DNA from: Rhodosorus marinus CCMP1338
Lineage: Eukaryota; Plantae; Rhodophyta
Direction of reading: 5' to 3'
DNA length: 64,000 nucleotides
Assembly: GCA_029953675.1 (NCBI GenBank)
Contig: JAMWBK010000002.1
Span: 620,001-684,000, forward strand
In this document: positions 51,401 to 60,206 of the stretch, piece after piece
How the letters are laid out: each line of letters begins with the position of its first letter
Numbering within the stretch: the stretch's first letter is position 1
The notes under the pieces: generated by a model
Databases searched by the model: none
Told to the model about the DNA's origin: nothing
Seen by the model: the letters and a program-made list of their open reading frames with translations, nothing else
Made by a program: the position numbers and the translations under genes

Positions 51401-52739
51401 TTAGTGCTTCTCCGTAAATTCTGAAGAAGGAAACGCACTCTCGAAGACTTGGCCGACAGTATCCAGGATATCAGTGGTGAGCATTGCTCTACCGTGCGCC
51501 TCAAAGGAAATCGCCGCGGCACACCTAGTTACTGCGCTCGCAAAGTAGGGTGCAATGTATCTGTACAAGCGTAGAGAGTTTTTGTGGTTGAGATCTAAAT
51601 GTACAATACATATTCTATGACCCAAGGACACATCGTTCAAGCACCTTAGAAAAGTCTAGAATCGGAAGAACTCACGCTTGATCCCACGATGCATTCGACA
51701 TCATTACCCACGCTGCATAGAGCGTAGTCAATCCCGAGAGAACGTCGCCCTGACCTCCACATCTTCTCGGGCTGCCCAGAGCTGGCATGTGCACATTGAT
51801 CAAGCCCCCCTTTGAAGCAACGACATCAGTTGGTCCCTTCAACAGAACCACGACATTTTCGCCGTAGAGCGTGCGCGTGGCCTCGACCGATTGATCGGAG
51901 TTTGCAGGAATCAGTCTGTTGTACTCCACTACGTTCGGAGTGATAATCACCGGACTGGTCGCTTCGTGAATCAGACCGGGTCCATCATCACGCAGTGCTA
52001 AGAACCAAAGTGCGTCGGCATCAAGGACAACTGGGATGTTCTCATTGCTCGCCATTTTCATGACTTCGGAGATGAACTGTCTAGCCTCTGAGCTCCTGCC
52101 CAAGCCTACTCATCGGAACCGCATGCAGGGTACTGTTGTCAAAGGTCTGTAGCGAAATATCTGTATGGGGAGGTGGAAACGGCACATACCGGGCCCGATC
52201 GCGATCGCGTGGCACCTTTTCAGAGTCGCCAGAGCAGAAGGAAGTCCCTCCATGTTGAGAAATGGGAGGACGATCAACTCAGGGCTGTAAGTTTTGATCG
52301 GTATAGCAGCGTCAGGATGGCAGATTAAGTAAGCAAGCTCTGCACCACTTCGAAGTGCGGCCGTGGCCGCATAATAAGGAGCACCAGTGTACTCAAGTGA
52401 TCCGCCTACAACTCCAATCCTTCCGTGCTGTCCTTTGTGATTGGAGTCCTGTGGACGGGCAAATGCTAAGATGAGAACAGCTCGTCATCCAAAGCGACGC
52501 GTTTTGCATGTCTGTCGATGTACTCTAGCCACTCGCCCCGTCCTGGAGGGGTCTCTTACCGAGAAGCGTGGTATGCACTCTGAGAAAACCTTGGCCTGAC
52601 TACCAGCATACTGATTCATCAGACGAGCGGCTGCGGCAATACTCTTCCTCGCATCGTCTCCCATCCTCAGCCGAGTTCTTCCGGTTATCACAGAAGGAGG
52701 TGCCAGGAACGAACTTAAACGAACTGAGTTTCGAAACAT
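51401..52739 (-). CDS. NAXD: ATP-dependent NAD(P)H-hydrate dehydratase (YjeF-C/CARKD), multi-exon
   Basis: HKGQHGRIGVVGGSLEYTGAPYYAA, AAIPIKTYSPELIV, IAIGPG|LGR, VVLDADAL, IITPNVVEY, GSPRRCGGQGDVLSG; Arg/Ser-rich presequence. Confidence 0.92.
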
Positions 52740-52879
52740 CCAAGCTCAGATCCCTACTTTCAGTGAACATACAAACGATCACCAAACCCAAAAGCAGAAC
52801 CTCTCCAACTGCCCCGTCTGGTTCGCTCATCCTCACTCAGCCGTCTTTAGATGCTCCTCGTCAACACCGATTAATAGCG

Positions 52880-53090
52880 CAAGATTGATTTTTATTTTTA
52901 TTTAGTTCACTTCTTATCAATAAATTAAGCACATACCTGTTTTTATTTTCATATAACCATTATATATATATTTATAATATTTATTTTGTTCATTATAATT
53001 TATATTTTAATAAATTTATAATAATCTAGGAATAAAGTATATATTTAAAATATAAATGTTGTTATTGGTATTGTGGCGATCTGTTGGATA
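52880..53090. promoter_or_regulatory. AT-rich intergenic tract between divergent NAXD and PUS1 starts (probable bidirectional promoter)
   Basis: Visibly almost all A/T against balanced-GC flanks; lies between head-to-head ATGs at 52739 (-) and 53216 (+). Confidence 0.45.
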
Positions 53091-53215
53091 GTATCCCATA
53101 ATGAAGGGTTTTGGTTTGGGTGCTCAGTCAAGGGTTTGGAGATGGAGTAAGGGCTCGATGCAGGACACCAGTGGAGCCGTTCTTTGCGAAATATTTACAG
53201 CTTTGACTTATTAGT

Positions 53216-56200
53216 ATGATGGAATTGACGAATACTGAAGACGATAAGGGAGAAATCCAGGCTCCAAAGCCCAAGAAACGACGTGTGGTTCTGTTCATGG
53301 GGTATTTGGGGTCTGGTTATCAGGGAATGCAGAGGAACCGAGGAGCGAAAACGATTGAAGGAGAACTTATGCGTGCACTTGTGAAGACTGCTTGTGTGCC
53401 GGAACATCTTCAAGATAACTACGCCAAGCTTAAGTGGTCGAGGTCTGCGAGAACCGATAAGGGTGTCTCTGCTGCCGGGCAGGTCGTGTCGGCCGATCTG
53501 AAATGTGAGGTTGATGGAGAGCTTTCCCAGGACTTGCTGGATCAGATCAATGAATCCTTGCCGAAAGACCTTACGGTAAGGGATATTTTGATATCCGTTT
53601 TCACCCAAAGACTGTGAAGATGAAAGCTCCCTGCCTCCTTGAGGCACGAAATTGAAGGAAGACACGTAAATTGTCCTGACTTTAACATAGGTGTACGGAT
53701 GGATGAGAGCAACTGGAAGCTTTAGTGCAAAATCAGATTGCGTGCGGCGAAGATATGAGTACTTACTCCCCACCAGCGGCCTCGGGGAGGACGAAGTGGA
53801 CAATGATAAGGTCGTGCATGACCGGCTCGCACGATTTAACGTTATCCTTGCGAGGTGCTATTCGTCATCTATGCTTTGTGGATTCTTTCCAAACGCACGT
53901 TCTTGTGTGCTCACCAGCTTCGAATCCTTCGGCACTCCTTCCGTGGAAACGCAGGTACTTAGGCTCGCACCTCTTTCACAACTTTACCGACAAGATGAAA
54001 GGAGATGACCCCACTGCACAGAGGTATATCCTGGAGTGTACCTGTTCTGAACCGTTTACGATAGAGAACAACAGCTTCCTTAAGGTGTCACTAGTAGGAC
54101 AGAGCTTTGTTCTTCATCAAATACGGAAGATGGTCGGCCTTGCTCTACAGGTTCGTTCGCCTGTGGCCAACCCATTCGCAAACACGTTAGCTTCAGTTAA
54201 GCGTACCAGAAGAGATCTGGACTGCCCCACTAACAGAGCACAGGTGTTTTGGTCAGGACTACCTCCAGAGACTCTCGATCTATTCATGTCACCGGAGAAG
54301 GAACTCCAGACTCCAACCGCGCCCGCACCGGGGCTGTTGTTGGCTGAATGCTTCTTCATTTTCTACAATCGTCGCTACCAGAAGGAGCTTCGAAAACCGA
54401 TCGCCCTGGATCACTTCCGAGAAGCAGCTGAGGACTTCAAGAGGAGTCGCATATACAGTTTCATTGCAAGCGAAGAGGCCAGGACAAGCTCTATGAAAAG
54501 GTTGGTAAAAGTTTCCCTTGATTCTGACGTAGGATGGTTTGTTAGTCACGCTTGACTCAACGGACCTACCTTTCCTGCAAAGCAGATGGATCAGCCTTCT
54601 GCCGGAAAGCATACCTCTGGATACTGGTACAATCATTGGAGACGTTGAAATGCTTTCAAACGCGAAACGAGAGGCCGAAGAGAGGCGAAAACGAAGACTG
54701 GAGTCACTTTATCCGGTCTTCGAGGATCTGGATTCAGTATTCCAGGTTCAAGACGTCGCCGAATTGGAGCAACGGAAGAACACGGTGAGTGGCCGTGCCT
54801 TAGATTTGTCCTGCTCTGAAGGACAAGAGGACCGTTCCGATTTAAACAGAAGCTCTCATGGCGATAACGTGCAGGTGCTACAGGTGAAACAGAGATTCGA
54901 TCGTGAGTTTGGGTACTCGCCCTCTTCAATTGTCCGGGTCCCCGGGTCGGTTATTCTGATTGGAGATTGGCTCGAGCTGCTCGAGCTCCCGTGCATTGGC
55001 TTTGCGCTTCCTGGTAAGATCTCGGACCTATACTCCGAATACCTGAGGTTTAATATACACTTGTTGACACGGATGGTCGTTTCCCGCGTGTCAAAGATGG
55101 AGTTCTCACGGCCGTGGCAAAGAGCTCAGATTCTGAGAACGTCCGCGTCAATCATTCCAATGAGGAGCTTGCTGATGCTGTGTTACGACCTAATGGTTGC
55201 AGAATGGCGTCCGCGGAGGATTCGACGAAGGTGGAGTGGAGCAGGTACGCCGGCAGCATAAATCCTTTGGTTGAAGTAAGCTTCGGCGGCTGAGCTCATC
55301 TGGAGCTTGTTCGAGTAGAATGTTTTCCTTAGGATGGCAATGCGGAGTTACAGGAAAGGGAATGCGTCCGAAAATGCTCCCGGCCGCGCGAGTTATGATC
55401 GGAGGCGAGCTCGGTGCACGCGACAACGAGCTTGGCGTAGATTCCGCATACCTTTTGGCCGCGTTGTTGACGTTCATGGACTTGCACGCGTGGAAGATGC
55501 CAAGGCTGGAGATGGCCAAGATGTGTTTCGGTTGGGAAAAGCAAGGCCGTGGATCTGCAACTGGTAAAGTGACGGATCCAAATGGCCCCTGCCAAGAAGA
55601 GCTTCAATCTGCATAGCGTTGCTCGTTACGGCTCAAGAATCTGTTCCCGTTGTTTCGCATTTGCTCCGAGTGCGGTCCTTAATAGCAAACAAGGCACCCT
55701 TGACTTGCTGAACAGTTTTTGCTTGGCCCGGTCACTCCCCGTGGAAGACCAAGCCGAAGCCAATATGTTAATCTGCTGTTCAACTCTTTGTCTTATCCAC
55801 TGCTACCCGCTATAGGTCTGATGAAGTACCTGTGTAGTCTGGAAGGGAAGCACAACCAGTTGCTACTAGCGAGCATCGCCCCAAAGCTGTCCACATCGAA
55901 CGTAACGCTACCGAGCATGATCTCGTTGGTGATGATCCGGCTCGGAAGTCTATCCCATGCTGAAGTGGAACGGAGGAAGAAGACCAGAGATAGGGTCAAG
56001 GCTGAAATAAGCGTTACGTTACGCATCATAACAGCCCGTTCTGGACGAGGCGAAGGACCTCAAAAGTCTCTCGCGCAACTGATCCAGTACAAACCGTCGG
56101 GGACGCTTGAAGCATGCGGCATAGTTCCGGATGAAGTGGTGAGAGAGCATCGGCTGCTGTCAACCCGAACCAGATACAAACCTCTGAACGAGCGCTGGGA

Positions 56201-56850
56201 TATGCCGACAGGTATCGCTTGACGCAGCGATGGTGGAGCTTGGAATTGAACTTGAAGCAATGGAGAGGCAGGAACCGGGGATCAACGATCTGCAAGAAAT
56301 TAGGCTTGGCTTAGTCACCATCAGTGCCGCCATGGAAGCGCAATGTATTGGTAGGGTGTACAGCATTTTAGAAAAAAGTGAAGACCTCTCGGGACTGGAG
56401 TTGATGGAGATTGGAAAGCTGTTGAATGACAGCGAAACCATTAGGAGTAAACTGGAATCAACGAGTGACGAGGTAATGATCCCGAACCAAACAGATTGGA
56501 AAACTGGAATGCTCCTTGCGCAACCATGCCTTTCGAGTTCTCTGTCTGAGACTGGAAGAGTAAACATCCTGTGTATCTGACAAAACCAGGCTACGCAAGT
56601 TGTACAAATGTGTATAGAGAAGGGAGCTTTGAGCGCTCGCTTGAGCAGTGTTTTCGTTGACGTCAATACAAGCTACGTTCTATGTACAGTGAAATCAGAA
56701 TCTGTTGCCGCATTTTGTCGAAGCTTGGAGGACGAGAGCGCGTCAATCATGGACGGCCTATCGATCGCGCCCGTAGTCCCAGGCATGGGGGCTTCTGTCT
56801 GGGAGTTCATGAAGAAGCCTGTGCCGAAACATAAGAGGAAGAAACAATAG
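53216..56850 (+). CDS. PUS1: Pus1/TruA-family tRNA pseudouridine synthase apparently fused to a degenerate galactokinase (GHMP) domain, multi-exon
   Basis: Pus1: GYLGSGYQGMQ, SARTDKGVSAAGQV, YLGSHLFHNFT, GQSFVLHQIRKMVG, APAPGLLL. An in-frame intron 54501-54585 joins it to galactokinase-like exons (FDREFGYSP..RVPGSVILIG, WSRY, GLMKYLCSLEG, IGKLLNDSE, GALSARL, PGMGA). Confidence 0.75.
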
Positions 56851-56935: not shown

Positions 56936-58271
56936 TCAGAAAACTTTACGCTTCTTCGCAATGGAACCAGGCACCGGCTCGTTGCGTCCGAAGGGCAACA
57001 TGGCCGTGAAACCGAGGAGAAGCAGAAGGGCGAGGGTCCACAATGCCCGAGCAACGACCGGAATCGATTTGAGGCCGTTGGCTGGAAAAGTGTCGGATGA
57101 AAGCTTCCACGACAGGGCCAATTCCATGAGAACGCTGTACAACAGGACGGCTCCTTGACTTCCAATTCTGAAGTGTCCGCTCACAGAGAGAGTTGCGTAT
57201 ATCTCCGGGACTCCGACTAGGCAGGGAAGTCCGACGAGCAGAAGATTGCACAGGACAAGCGGCGATTCAGCCGGTATGAAAAGTGCGGCTTTGAGAAGAA
57301 AATTGATCAGATCTACAAGGGGGCCGATTCCGACCACAAAGCACACAGTTAGGAAGTGCTCTCTACTCGTCAAGAAGCTTGGGACGCGGGATTCCTGCAA
57401 CATTAGGACAAACAGTTGCTCAGCTTGAGATACAAATGACACACAAGGAAATGCAATGCTATCACGTCCCCTGGACTCGATTGATGGCGATCACCTCATG
57501 TGGCGGTCTTGCCCTCTCGTGGGTCAGTGTAAACCAATTGAACGGTTCCGCAAACCTGTTTATGAGGAACAGGCCGATCTCCATGCCAACAAAGTTACAT
57601 AACAGTACGTCGAGAACCCACCTATCCCACCAACATTCATTGAAGTTGGGCAGGACAGACTTGACCGACTCCTCAATCAGCTCAAACGTGATGCTCTGAA
57701 TCCAGAGGACGCTCCGGTTGCGCATGATCAGCGCCTTGAAACACCATCCGAGCAGATGGGCGAGAAAAAATACATCATTCACAATGTCTCTAACGTTACC
57801 GAATGTGAGAGCACAGTTCTCGCCATAGCCCTTCTCATGAGGAGCTGGGGAAATTCCAACACTTGGATCCACAAAGTTCTGCGCTGGGAACAAAACAGAA
57901 CGGGCCAATCTCGATTGTCAGGAACGCGGCTCTCAAACCCCTCCGGCTTCAGTGAGGCATCCTACCAATACCATCCTCGCCTGTTTAGGAGGTAGCCAGA
58001 ACATGCAAGTGAGGAGCATTGAATACAAAATCGAGGCTGCCATGACAACCCTCCACAATGCTGGATGTGGCCAGCAGAAGAAATCTTCTCGAACAAGGAG
58101 CAACCAAATGCTGATAAACACCACGCTCGCCATGAACAGGCTACAAACAACAGGTGACCCACTCCAATCTCCAAAATACCACACCAACGAGCTCAGGACG
58201 GCTCCTGTAATCACAGAAGCCGCCCACGATGAATCTCTAAGACCCATTCCTCCAGTCACCGATCCCATCAT
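56936..58271 (-). CDS. PSS: Phosphatidylserine synthase (base-exchange, PSS family), multi-exon
   Basis: FCWPHPALWRVV, GYGENC, DVFFLAHLLGWCFKALIMRN, SITFELIE, LPNFNECWWDRWVLDVLLCNFVG, INFLLKAALFIP. Confidence 0.92.
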
Positions 58272-59348: not shown

Positions 59349-60206
59349 CTAGAACCTGGTTGTCCCAGAAAAGCTAGGAGTGACTGGACTCAGTATTTCA
59401 CCCTCCTTGTGACTGTTCCTATAGGACTTTTGACAAACTGGGCAATGGCCCATGAGTTTGATGACATGCAGAATATTAGTATGCATGTCGCAGTTGCGAT
59501 GGAAGAAGTGGCCATGACAGTCACGAAGACGCATAGCTGGTTTCTCATGGTCAAACTCATCCAAACACAATATACAAGCGTCGGCGAGAGTAGCGTCCGC
59601 AGACACCAACAGGTTGTCCTCATCGTCAGAAAAAGACAGGGAAGTATCTGGAGTGGATACTGTAACCTCTTCCTGCTGCACATCTAGGACCTCTTCGAGA
59701 ATGCCGACTTCGAACGGGCTTGGTCCATACATTTCAGAAAAGTCTACCCTCAGCACGGGTCTTATTGTCCCCACTGAAAGATTCTTCTGGAAGAACAGAC
59801 CCTCGCAGAAGTTAACCTCGTATCTCCAGCGACCAATGGTCAAGACAGCAGAAGTCTCTCCATCAGAGAGTGCCTTCTCAAGCTTCTCCCGTTCCTCCTC
59901 ACTGTACCGCACCCACGTCACCCCATCATCCCAGAACCACTCCGGAACCTGAGTAACAGCCCTCCGAACCCGGCTCTCTCGGCCACCGTCGTTAACAGAG
60001 CTATCCTTCAGATCCTCAACGTCAATTCTCCTCGTCTTTCCAAGTGCCGAGTACTCAATTACAGTCTTCCACCCAGGACCACTAGTGCCATACGCCAACT
60101 CCAGCTCTGCATTCAGAATCGGACCATACGGCCTCCACAGACGGTTCCCGTCCGAGTCCTCCCGCTCCCAAATTACAACACCCGCTGTGAGAGACTCCAT
60201 CTCCAT
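59349..60206 (-). CDS. WWE-WWE-RING-H2 (Deltex-like) E3 ubiquitin ligase; further 3' exons probable to about 58900
   Basis: VIWEREDSDGNRLWRPYGPILNAELELAY (WWE1), WFWDDGVTWVRYSEEEREKLEKA..YEVNF..QKNLSVGTIRPVLR (WWE2), CILC..CHGHFFHRNC..CPVC (RING-H2); donor site after HKEG. Confidence 0.8.
   Translation of the reverse strand: MEMESLTAGVVIWEREDSDGNRLWRPYGPILNAELELAYGTSGPGWKTVIEYSALGKTRRIDVEDLKDSSVNDGGRESRVRRAVTQVPEWFWDDGVTWVRYSEEEREKLEKALSDGETSAVLTIGRWRYEVNFCEGLFFQKNLSVGTIRPVLRVDFSEMYGPSPFEVGILEEVLDVQQEEVTVSTPDTSLSFSDDEDNLLVSADATLADACILCLDEFDHEKPAMRLRDCHGHFFHRNCDMHTNILHVIKLMGHCPVCQKSYRNSHKEGEILSPVTPSFSGTTRF

What the first reader, a model, noticed from the sequence alone, without database searches (positions are those of the whole stretch)
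53216..56850. Pseudouridine synthase Pus1 fused to a catalytically dead galactokinase fold
Seen in sequence: the Pus1 frame has a donor at 54501 and an in-phase acceptor at 54585 (85 nt, typical intron size here). Splicing restores a Pus1-like C-terminal helix (SMKRWISLL) and continues without a stop into PVFEDLDSVF..FDREFGYSPSSIVRVPGSVILIGDWLEL. That matches the plant/GalK2-type start PIFSSLEPVY..FGASP..RSPGRVNLIGEHIDY. Later exons follow the GHMP order to a basic NLS-like tail (KKPVPKHKRKKQ). Established galactokinase catalytic elements are all altered: the PGR Arg is Ser, GEHxDY is GDWLEL, the GxGLSSSA ATP loop is DNELGVDSA, and the catalytic-base MDQ is MKY. The Pus1 catalytic RTD is intact. 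Inference: a pseudo-sugar-kinase kept as a metabolite-sensing or RNA/protein-binding module on a tRNA/snRNA-modifying enzyme. This could link galactose metabolism (floridoside, galactans in red algae) to pseudouridylation. Some internal exon boundaries (about 55276-55330) could not be fixed.
Basis: partly seen in the sequence, partly recalled or inferred. Interest (0 to 1): 0.78.

Follow-up and report, generated by a model that had tools for sequence, protein, structure and literature searches.

The report
Pus1 enzyme carrying dead galactokinase domain
This red-alga gene really does make one protein that joins an RNA-modifying enzyme (Pus1) to a galactokinase-like half that has lost its kinase residues, but the join is old and shared with relatives whose kinase half still looks intact.

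Summary
Confirmed and re-framed. The window is Rhodosorus marinus nuclear DNA. Bases 53216-56850 (+) form one 11-exon gene whose 850-aa product is identical to NCBI hypothetical protein NDN08_007535. The proposed 85-nt intron (54501-54585) is real. It is spliced out in two transcript contigs from related strains, and the human PUS1 alignment runs across the junction. The unresolved boundary is an intron at 55245-55318.

The C-terminal 480 residues are a full-length GALK2-type GHMP fold. All four kinase motifs are replaced. This half is still under purifying selection, with dN/dS 0.18-0.23 against 0.17-0.19 for the Pus1 half.

The new point is that the fusion is not a Rhodosorus invention. At least 14 unnamed eukaryotic sequences carry the same Pus1-linker-GalK architecture with intact kinase motifs. 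A more distant transcript shares the dead state. Three Galdieria species carry a far more diverged C-terminal half, whose homology I could not establish.

My best reading is an active Pus1 with a relic kinase domain kept for a kinase-independent role. I found no evidence for metabolite sensing. I found no paper describing the fusion.

The parts
53216..56850 (+). Whole coding region of the Pus1-GHMP fusion gene (11 exons, 850 codons plus stop). Exons: 53216-53575, 53691-53854, 53955-54150, 54244-54500, 54586-54784, 54875-55013, 55097-55244, 55319-55563, 55816-56138, 56212-56472, 56590-56850.
   Evidence: All ten introns are GT-AG and 73-252 nt long. The translation is identical to NCBI NDN08_007535 / P0001. 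The exon blocks match transcript contigs L001 and L002.
53216..54604 (+). Pus1-type pseudouridine synthase half (aa 1-332). It includes catalytic RTDKGV (53450-53467), RRRYEY (53745-53762), HQIRKMVG (54115-54138) and the C-terminal helix SSMKRWISLLP, which spans intron 4.
   Evidence: Pfam PF01416 at E=2e-14. Human PUS1 structures 9h51/4iqm at E~3e-68, aligned through ...SMKRWISLLP = SMAQWLSTLP. The motifs are conserved in all family members.
54501..54585 (+). Intron 4 (85 nt), the one the fusion call rests on. If it were retained, the frame would stop at 54555.
   Evidence: It is removed in both L001 (1161|1163 maps to 54499|54586) and L002 (1044|1046). The PUS1 homology crosses the junction.
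54605..54706 (+). Linker of about 34 aa between the Pus1 C-helix and the galactokinase N-terminus (ESIPLDTGTIIGDVEMLSNAKREAEERRKRRLES). It contains the internal ATG at 54650.
   Evidence: Its length and several residues (W327, I342, R360, P369) are invariant across seven family members. The Met is not conserved in the intact-kinase members, so it is not an ancestral start codon.
54707..56850 (+). GALK2-type GHMP-fold half (aa 367-850) with all kinase motifs replaced. Motif I is VRVPGSVILIGDWLELLELP (54932-54991). Motif II is GGELGARDNELGVDSAYLL (55401-55457). The catalytic-base site is GRGSATGLMKYLCSL (55545-55841, across intron 8). Motif III is ARLSSVFVDVNTSYV (56635-56679).
   Evidence: PDB 2a2c at E=6e-07. 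hhalign 99.8% against intact GalK halves. AF2 pLDDT 90.7, with Foldseek top hits GALK2, Gal3p and Gal1p at TM 0.75-0.81. Motif table. dN/dS 0.18-0.23.
55245..55318 (+).
   Evidence: The transcript blocks end at 55244 and resume at 55313-55319 in both L001 and L002. Only this junction reproduces the NCBI protein.
55183..55394 (+). Stretch LRPNGCRMASAEDSTKVEWSRMFSLGWQCGVTGKGMRPKMLPAARV. It is the part best conserved among kinase-dead relatives and a candidate for a newly constrained surface.
   Evidence: It is 60-65% identical to P0094, against 38% over the whole half. It is also present in fragment P0005. Local dN/dS is 0.08-0.13.
56812..56847 (+). Basic C-terminal tail KKPVPKHKRKKQ (looks like a nuclear localisation signal).
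   Evidence: It is conserved in L001, L002 and P0094 (RKPEAKKRKKAAR). Galdieria has an analogous basic tail. Most intact-kinase members lack it. Local dN/dS is 0.04-0.07. The localisation function is an inference.

Best explanation
The locus encodes one 850-aa polypeptide. Its N-terminal third is a Pus1-type tRNA/snRNA pseudouridine synthase with its catalytic residues intact, and most likely active. Its C-terminal 480 residues are a complete GALK2-type galactokinase fold inherited from an old Pus1-galactokinase gene fusion. In the Rhodosorus lineage, and in at least one more distant relative, that domain has lost the galactose-binding residues, the ATP phosphate loop, the catalytic Asp and motif III. 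It can no longer work as a sugar kinase by the known mechanism. It is nevertheless kept under purifying selection as strong as on the Pus1 half. The most likely role is kinase-independent and serves the Pus1 half: folding or stability, oligomerisation, docking of RNA or a partner protein, and nuclear import through the conserved basic tail. Shown: single spliced ORF, homology, motif loss, selection, and an old shared architecture. Inferred: Pus1 activity, absence of any kinase activity, and the scaffold or localisation role.
For: One ORF and one mRNA. The GT-AG model equals the NCBI protein. Introns, including 54501-54585, are absent from two transcript contigs of related strains. Each contig retains a different single intron, which shows they are spliced cDNA and not intronless DNA. 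A third, more distant transcript (L005) also carries both halves. Pus1 half: PF01416, human PUS1 at E~3e-68 across the junction, and RTDKGV, RRYEY and HQIRKMVG all kept. GHMP half: 2a2c at 6e-07, hhalign 99.8%, AF2 and Foldseek hits to GALK2, Gal3p and Gal1p. All four motifs are replaced. Selection: dN/dS is 0.18-0.23 for the GHMP half against 0.17-0.19 for the Pus1 half. The departure from neutrality has p<=1e-14. The kinase-dead form persists at only 38% identity in P0094. Old fusion: the same architecture occurs with intact motifs in P0007-9, P0088-93 and P0226-228, and as single uninterrupted ORFs on genomic contigs. The linker is conserved. Trees built from the Pus1 half and from the GalK half are congruent. 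The GHMP half diverged about twice as fast as the Pus1 half on the kinase-dead branches: 21-23% against 40-44% identity to intact members.
Against: There is no biochemical data. Pus1 activity and lack of kinase activity rest on motif logic only. The transcripts come from related strains (about 84-94% nucleotide identity), not from the sequenced strain. An extra internal transcript or an intron-4-retaining isoform (stop at 54555) cannot be excluded. Nothing here shows what the dead domain binds or that the Pus1 half depends on it. The high-confidence AF2 model rests on an alignment dominated by active GALK2 homologues. It shows compatibility with the fold, not pocket detail.
Confidence: 0.6

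Rival explanations
1. Ligand sensor. The dead kinase domain still binds a small molecule, such as galactose, Gal-1-P, ATP or something new, and uses that to regulate Pus1 or a partner.
For: The fold is retained and under selection. Gal3p, a catalytically dead galactokinase paralogue that acts as a ligand-dependent transducer, is among the top structural matches. The former active-site lobe is the most constrained part, with dN/dS 0.08-0.14.
Against: Gal3p keeps its galactose- and ATP-binding residues. Here they are the residues replaced: R to S, E to D, H to W and D to E in motif I, acidic residues and an insertion in the phosphate loop, and D to K at the base. No ligand data exist.
Confidence: 0.15
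2. Remodelled enzyme. The GHMP half has acquired a different catalytic activity or substrate, using a rebuilt pocket.
For: There is strong constraint on the N-terminal lobe. A block conserved only among the kinase-dead members (LRPNGCR...WGWQCGV.GKG.RP..LPAAR) suggests a new function.
Against: All three GHMP signature motifs, including the phosphate-binding loop shared by every GHMP kinase, are lost. From general knowledge, I know of no GHMP-fold enzyme that works without them.
Confidence: 0.07
3. Two proteins. Pus1 ends at the stop inside the unspliced intron (54555), and a separate GHMP-like protein starts at ATG 54650.
For: An in-frame Met exists at 54650 and is conserved among Rhodosorus-type sequences. 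Intron retention is frequent in the transcript contigs, although there it affects other introns.
Against: Both transcript contigs splice intron 4 and read straight through. The Pus1 C-terminal helix lies downstream of the intron. Relatives without introns encode the fusion as single ORFs of 830-918 aa. The Met is absent in those relatives.
Confidence: 0.03
4. Decaying remnant. The GHMP half is a pseudogenised tail drifting neutrally.
For: Loss of all catalytic motifs. Faster divergence than the Pus1 half on this branch.
Against: The frame is open through seven exons in three Rhodosorus-type lineages and in P0094. dN/dS is about 0.2 with p<=1e-14.
Confidence: 0.01

Closest known systems
Unnamed Pus1-galactokinase fusion proteins (JGI/IMG automatic label 'galactokinase/tRNA pseudouridine(38-40) synthase': P0007-9, P0088-93, P0226-228)
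   Same: They share the domain order, the conserved ~35-40-aa linker (W...SLYP) and all Pus1 motifs. The GalK half forms a clade of its own, apart from GALK2 and plant GalK.
   Different: Those members keep PGRVxLIGEHxDYN, GLxSSSSL, GGxxDH and GAGWGG. The Rhodosorus protein has lost all four, lacks the N-terminal MGxxxS motif seen in most of them, and has gained a basic C-tail.
Human N-acetylgalactosamine kinase GALK2 (PDB 2a2c/2a2d) and plant-type galactokinase
   Same: Best solved-structure match by sequence (E=6e-07) and by fold (TM 0.75/0.81). The match is collinear from the N-terminal PVFxxLxxVF segment to the C-terminus.
   Different: GALK2 is a stand-alone active kinase. Identity is about 20%, and every catalytic or binding motif is replaced here.
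Yeast Gal3p (PDB 3v2u, 3v5r)
   Same: A galactokinase-fold protein that has lost catalysis yet is kept for a non-enzymatic job. It is a top structural match, TM 0.75.
   Different: From general knowledge, Gal3p is inactivated by a small lesion and still binds galactose and ATP to capture Gal80p. Here the binding residues themselves are gone, and the domain is covalently attached to Pus1.
C. elegans XOL-1 (recalled from memory, not tested here)
   Same: A GHMP-fold protein with no kinase activity and a regulatory role.
   Different: It is unrelated in sequence context, is not fused to an RNA enzyme, and did not appear among the listed hits.
Human PUS1 / yeast Pus1 (PDB 4iqm, 9h51, 7r9f)
   Same: The N-terminal half is an orthologue-grade match (E~3e-68) with the catalytic Asp motif and the C-terminal helix.
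   Different: Known Pus1 proteins end shortly after that helix. This one continues for about 520 more residues.

Membership tests
TruA/Pus1 pseudouridine synthases | PseudoU_synth_1 domain above the Pfam threshold | tested here: met
   PF01416 at 54.4 bits against a cutoff of 23.3.
TruA/Pus1 pseudouridine synthases | Catalytic Asp in the RTDKGV motif, plus the RRYEY and HQIRKMVG motifs | tested here: met
   aa 79-84, 139-144 and 229-236 are intact and invariant across the family.
TruA/Pus1 pseudouridine synthases | Full-length similarity to solved Pus1 structures, including the C-terminal helix | tested here: met
   9h51/4iqm at E~3e-68, aligned over aa 13-332.
TruA/Pus1 pseudouridine synthases | Pseudouridylation activity on tRNA or snRNA | not testable with these tools
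   Needs an enzyme assay.
Galactokinase / GHMP kinases | GHMP two-lobe fold and homology | tested here: met
   hhalign 99.8%, E=1.9e-29. Foldseek hit to 2a2d at E=9e-25, TM 0.75/0.81.
Galactokinase / GHMP kinases | Galactose-binding signature (motif I, PGRVNLIGEHxDY; Pfam PF10509) | tested here: not met
   PF10509 scores 20.2 bits, below the 23.1 cutoff. The sequence is PGSVILIGDWLEL.
Galactokinase / GHMP kinases | Phosphate-binding loop (motif II, PxGSGLSSSA; PF00288) | tested here: not met
   No PF00288 hit. The sequence is GARDNELGVDSAY, with a one-residue insertion.
Galactokinase / GHMP kinases | Catalytic base Asp (GGMDQ, or GGxxDH in the fused clade) | tested here: not met
   The sequence is GLMKY, with Lys at the Asp position.
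Galactokinase / GHMP kinases | Motif III (TGAGWGG; PF08544) | tested here: not met
   No PF08544 hit. The sequence is SSVFVDVNT, with an insertion.
Pus1-GalK fusion family (undescribed) | N-terminal Pus1, conserved linker and C-terminal GALK2-type domain in one ORF | tested here: met
   Alignment A2, Pfam architecture of the relatives and congruent half-trees.
Gal3p-like ligand-dependent transducers | Retained galactose and ATP binding residues despite loss of catalysis | tested here: not met
   The binding residues are replaced. Actual binding was not assayed.

The most novel reading that the evidence does not exclude
The galactokinase domain has had a second, kinase-independent job for Pus1 since the fusion arose early in red algae. 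One example would be tying tRNA/snRNA pseudouridylation, or the enzyme's localisation, to sugar status. On this reading, Rhodosorus-type algae and possibly Galdieria are natural separation-of-function variants: the kinase died and the other job remained. This would parallel Gal1/Gal3 in yeast, but on an RNA-modifying enzyme.
Probability: 0.2. Interest if true: 0.7.

Novelty: new variant of a known kind. Interest (0 to 1): 0.5.

Why it matters
Both halves belong to well-known enzyme families, and pseudoenzymes derived from galactokinase are known (Gal3p). Three things are unusual here. First, a tRNA/snRNA pseudouridine synthase is permanently fused to a sugar kinase. Second, the fusion appears old, being shared between Rhodosorus, Galdieria and many unnamed eukaryotic sequences. 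Third, the kinase half is retained under strong selection after losing every catalytic motif. That pattern argues that the kinase domain does something for Pus1 that does not need phosphotransfer. The kinase-dead and kinase-intact members give a ready-made comparison to find out what. It also matters for annotation. The NCBI record calls the protein hypothetical and Pfam sees only the Pus1 domain, so pathway reconstructions should not count this gene as a galactokinase. I found no paper describing the fusion.

Tried and rejected
(1) My first model for intron 7 (55276-55358, acceptor ggaaag|) gave an open frame but was wrong. The transcripts and the NCBI protein fix it at 55245-55318.

(2) AF2 on a 3-sequence alignment failed (pLDDT 36). 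A 93-sequence alignment gave pLDDT 90.7.

(3) I could not name the organisms behind the intact-kinase fusions. Cluster look-ups of the proteins and of ten neighbouring genes gave no names. Full-text searches for SRR25749194, SRR23274478, ERZ6863533, GCA_016292395/JADWZK and the JGI sample ids found nothing. A red-algal omics supplement did not help. 'Red-algal-wide' is therefore an inference from the two named lineages (Rhodosorus, Galdieria).

(4) I considered that loss of floridoside removed the need for galactokinase in this class. This is not supported, because Stylonematophyceae such as Stylonema and Tsunamia do contain floridoside (PMC8523428).

(5) Galdieria C-terminal half against the GalK profile: the alignment is collinear over 416 columns, but hhalign probability is only 15% (E=0.0017). 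Against the Rhodosorus half it is 6%. Homology is likely from position, length and the motif I remnant, but it is not demonstrated.

(6) I could not establish whether Rhodosorus has a separate canonical galactokinase. Nothing else in the window matches GalK or Pus1, and the protein searches are exhausted.

(7) Literature searches for a Pus1-galactokinase fusion returned no relevant paper.
Full report
**What is there.** The region is eukaryotic, with short GT-AG introns. I assembled an 11-exon model:
- 53216-53575
- 53691-53854
- 53955-54150
- 54244-54500
- 54586-54784
- 54875-55013
- 55097-55244
- 55319-55563
- 55816-56138
- 56212-56472
- 56590-56850

It has ten introns of 73-252 nt. Its 850-aa translation is identical to the NCBI protein 'hypothetical protein NDN08_007535 [Rhodosorus marinus]'. 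The window is therefore R. marinus nuclear DNA, and the fused model already exists in GenBank, unnamed. Pfam recognises only the Pus1 domain (PF01416, E=2e-14). It gives a sub-threshold hit to the galactokinase galactose-binding signature (PF10509, 20.2 bits against a cutoff of 23.1).

**Is the fusion real?** The critical intron (54501-54585, 85 nt, phase 2) is supported in three ways.
- The alignment to human PUS1 structures (E~3e-68) runs through ...SMKRWISLLP, matching SMAQWLSTLP. The Pus1 C-terminal helix is therefore encoded downstream of the intron.
- Two JGI transcript contigs from related strains were compared with the window (L001 and L002, about 84-94% nucleotide identity, dS 0.25-0.39). 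They align to it in blocks that match my exons. Every intron is removed except one in each contig: intron 1 in L001 and intron 6 in L002. Those retained introns show that the contigs are spliced cDNA from intron-bearing genes. In both, intron 4 is gone and the ORF runs from Pus1 straight into the GHMP half.
- In intron-poor relatives the same two-domain protein is a single uninterrupted ORF of 830-918 aa on genomic contigs.

Intron 7 is 55245-55318. My own first guess (55276-55358) was wrong.

**What the C-terminal half is.**
- Residues 367-850 align almost end to end with human GALK2 (PDB 2a2c, E=6e-07).
- They align with the galactokinase halves of related fusion proteins at hhalign probability 99.8%, E=1.9e-29, over 456 columns.
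- An AF2 model built on a 93-sequence alignment has pLDDT 90.7 and pTM 0.91. Its best PDB matches are GALK2 (TM 0.75/0.81), yeast Gal3p and Gal1p, then GALK1.
- The alignment behind that model is dominated by active GALK2 homologues. The model shows fold compatibility, not pocket detail.

All four kinase signatures are replaced:

| Signature | Canonical form | Rhodosorus |
|---|---|---|
| Motif I (galactose binding) | PGRVxLIGEHxDY | PGSVILIGDWLEL |
| Motif II (phosphate loop) | GLSSSA | NELGVDSA, with an insertion |
| Catalytic base | GGMDQ | GLMKY |
| Motif III | GAGWGG | SVFVDVNT, with an insertion |

By the established galactokinase mechanism, this domain cannot bind galactose or ATP in the usual way, and it cannot catalyse transfer.

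**Is it decaying?** No. Nei-Gojobori dN/dS among the window gene and the two transcript orthologues is 0.18-0.23 for the GHMP half and 0.17-0.19 for the Pus1 half. The deficit of non-synonymous changes in the GHMP half has p<=1e-14. Constraint is strongest over the N-terminal lobe that once carried the active site (0.08-0.14) and over the basic tail (0.04-0.07). It is weakest in a helical segment at aa 668-742 (0.57-0.75). A more distant transcript (P0094 on L005, 38% identical in this half) carries the same kinase-dead state, the same basic tail and the Pus1 half. The pseudo-kinase has therefore been kept over a long divergence.

**The wider picture.** I ran an exhaustive phmmer search with the GHMP half against 1.84 billion representative proteins. 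After the Rhodosorus-type sequences, the best hits were 900-980-aa proteins matching at their C-terminal halves. Pfam shows that these carry PF01416 plus all three galactokinase/GHMP domains. Profile searches found more of them (P0088-93 and P0226-228). JGI labels one 'galactokinase/tRNA pseudouridine(38-40) synthase'. All of these keep the Pus1 motifs and intact kinase motifs.
- The ~35-40-aa linker between the Pus1 helix and the galactokinase N-terminus (SLYP...) is conserved in length and at several positions.
- The fused GalK halves form their own clade, apart from GALK2 and plant GalK.
- Trees built from the two halves are congruent, which points to one old fusion.

Three Galdieria species have 913-943-aa Pus1 proteins with a C-terminal extension of the right length and position. 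It has a recognisable motif I remnant (RVPLENICIIGEVTKSLNVPC). Profile statistics are weak, at hhalign 15%. I treat homology of that extension as probable, not shown. If it holds, the fusion predates the deepest split in red algae, and the kinase died at least twice. I could not name the organisms behind the intact-kinase members.

**How it most likely works.** The Pus1 half should act as an ordinary Pus1, making pseudouridine in tRNAs and U2 snRNA. This is inferred from orthology and intact catalytic motifs. The GHMP half diverged about twice as fast as the Pus1 half on the kinase-dead branches: 21-23% against 40-44% identity to intact members, compared with 37-51% against 45-61% among intact members. 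It is now tightly constrained again. That is the pattern expected when a domain loses one function and keeps or gains another. I think the domain most likely serves Pus1 non-catalytically, through stability, oligomerisation, RNA or partner docking, or nuclear import by way of the tail. Two candidate new functional elements are a block conserved only among the kinase-dead members (aa 468-513, LRPNGCR...WGWQCGV.GKG.RP..LPAAR) and the basic tail.

A Gal3p-like ligand sensor is possible but less likely, because the ligand-binding residues are the ones lost. Separate proteins and neutral decay are effectively excluded.

**Verdict.** The main correction is evolutionary: this is a kinase-dead member of an old, apparently undescribed Pus1-galactokinase fusion family, not a one-off. 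Literature searches found no description of the fusion. I rate the interest as moderate. The architecture and its retention after kinase death are odd and experimentally tractable, but both parts are known families and the mechanism is still inferred.

Noticed in passing
Relatives P0007, P0008, P0009, P0088, P0089, P0092, P0093 and Galdieria P0095-97 (N-termini): Most intact-kinase fusion proteins and all three Galdieria proteins start with MGxxxS (MGSLFSS, MGGIFSS, MGLFWSH...), which looks like an N-myristoylation signal. A basic stretch follows. The Rhodosorus protein (MMELTNTEDD...) lacks this motif. A membrane-anchored Pus1 would be unexpected.
   Followed up: partly
L003, L004, L006, L007 (contigs carrying intact-kinase fusions): Gene order downstream of the fusion gene is conserved: a PF03602 (RsmD-like methyltransferase) gene, then a Trigger_N gene on the opposite strand, and an FKBP_C gene in L004 and L006. 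The contigs are compact and apparently intron-poor, with GC 0.48-0.55. The source organisms are unidentified.
   Followed up: partly
window 52860-53060: A tract of about 200 bp that is very AT-rich (GC about 26%, against 48% for the window). It lies just upstream of the fusion gene, between it and the divergently oriented upstream gene, and is probably a shared promoter or intergenic region. Transcript contigs L001 and L002 begin at about 53147-53153.
   Followed up: no
window 51672-52103 (-): An exon-sized ORF of an NAD(P)H-hydrate dehydratase (Pfam Carb_kinase PF01256, E=5e-22) on the minus strand upstream.
   Followed up: partly
window 56936-58271 (-): A phosphatidylserine synthase gene (PF03034, three exon-sized ORFs) converges on the fusion gene. 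Transcript L001 extends to 57062, so the fusion gene's 3' UTR overlaps the last PSS coding exon on the other strand. Contig L002 runs on collinearly with the window to base 60000 (the end of the stretch compared), probably because overlapping transcripts were merged in assembly.
   Followed up: partly
L001 424-545 (homologous to window intron 1, 53576-53690): In the related strain, the first intron begins ATAAGG instead of GTAAGG, and it is the one intron retained in that transcript contig. This may be a splice-site mutation or a minor isoform. The called ORF there starts at an internal Met.
   Followed up: no
window aa 668-742 of the protein (about 56070-56366): dN/dS rises locally to 0.57-0.75 in the helical insertion of the GHMP C-lobe, against about 0.1-0.2 elsewhere. 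This could be relaxed constraint or lineage-specific adaptation in that sub-domain.
   Followed up: no
L006 (NCBI GCA_016292395.1, JADWZK010351187.1) 3-1996: The Pus1 and GalK parts are in different frames and overlap at about 404-467, so the database holds them as separate small proteins. This is probably an assembly frameshift in a very fragmented genome.
   Followed up: partly
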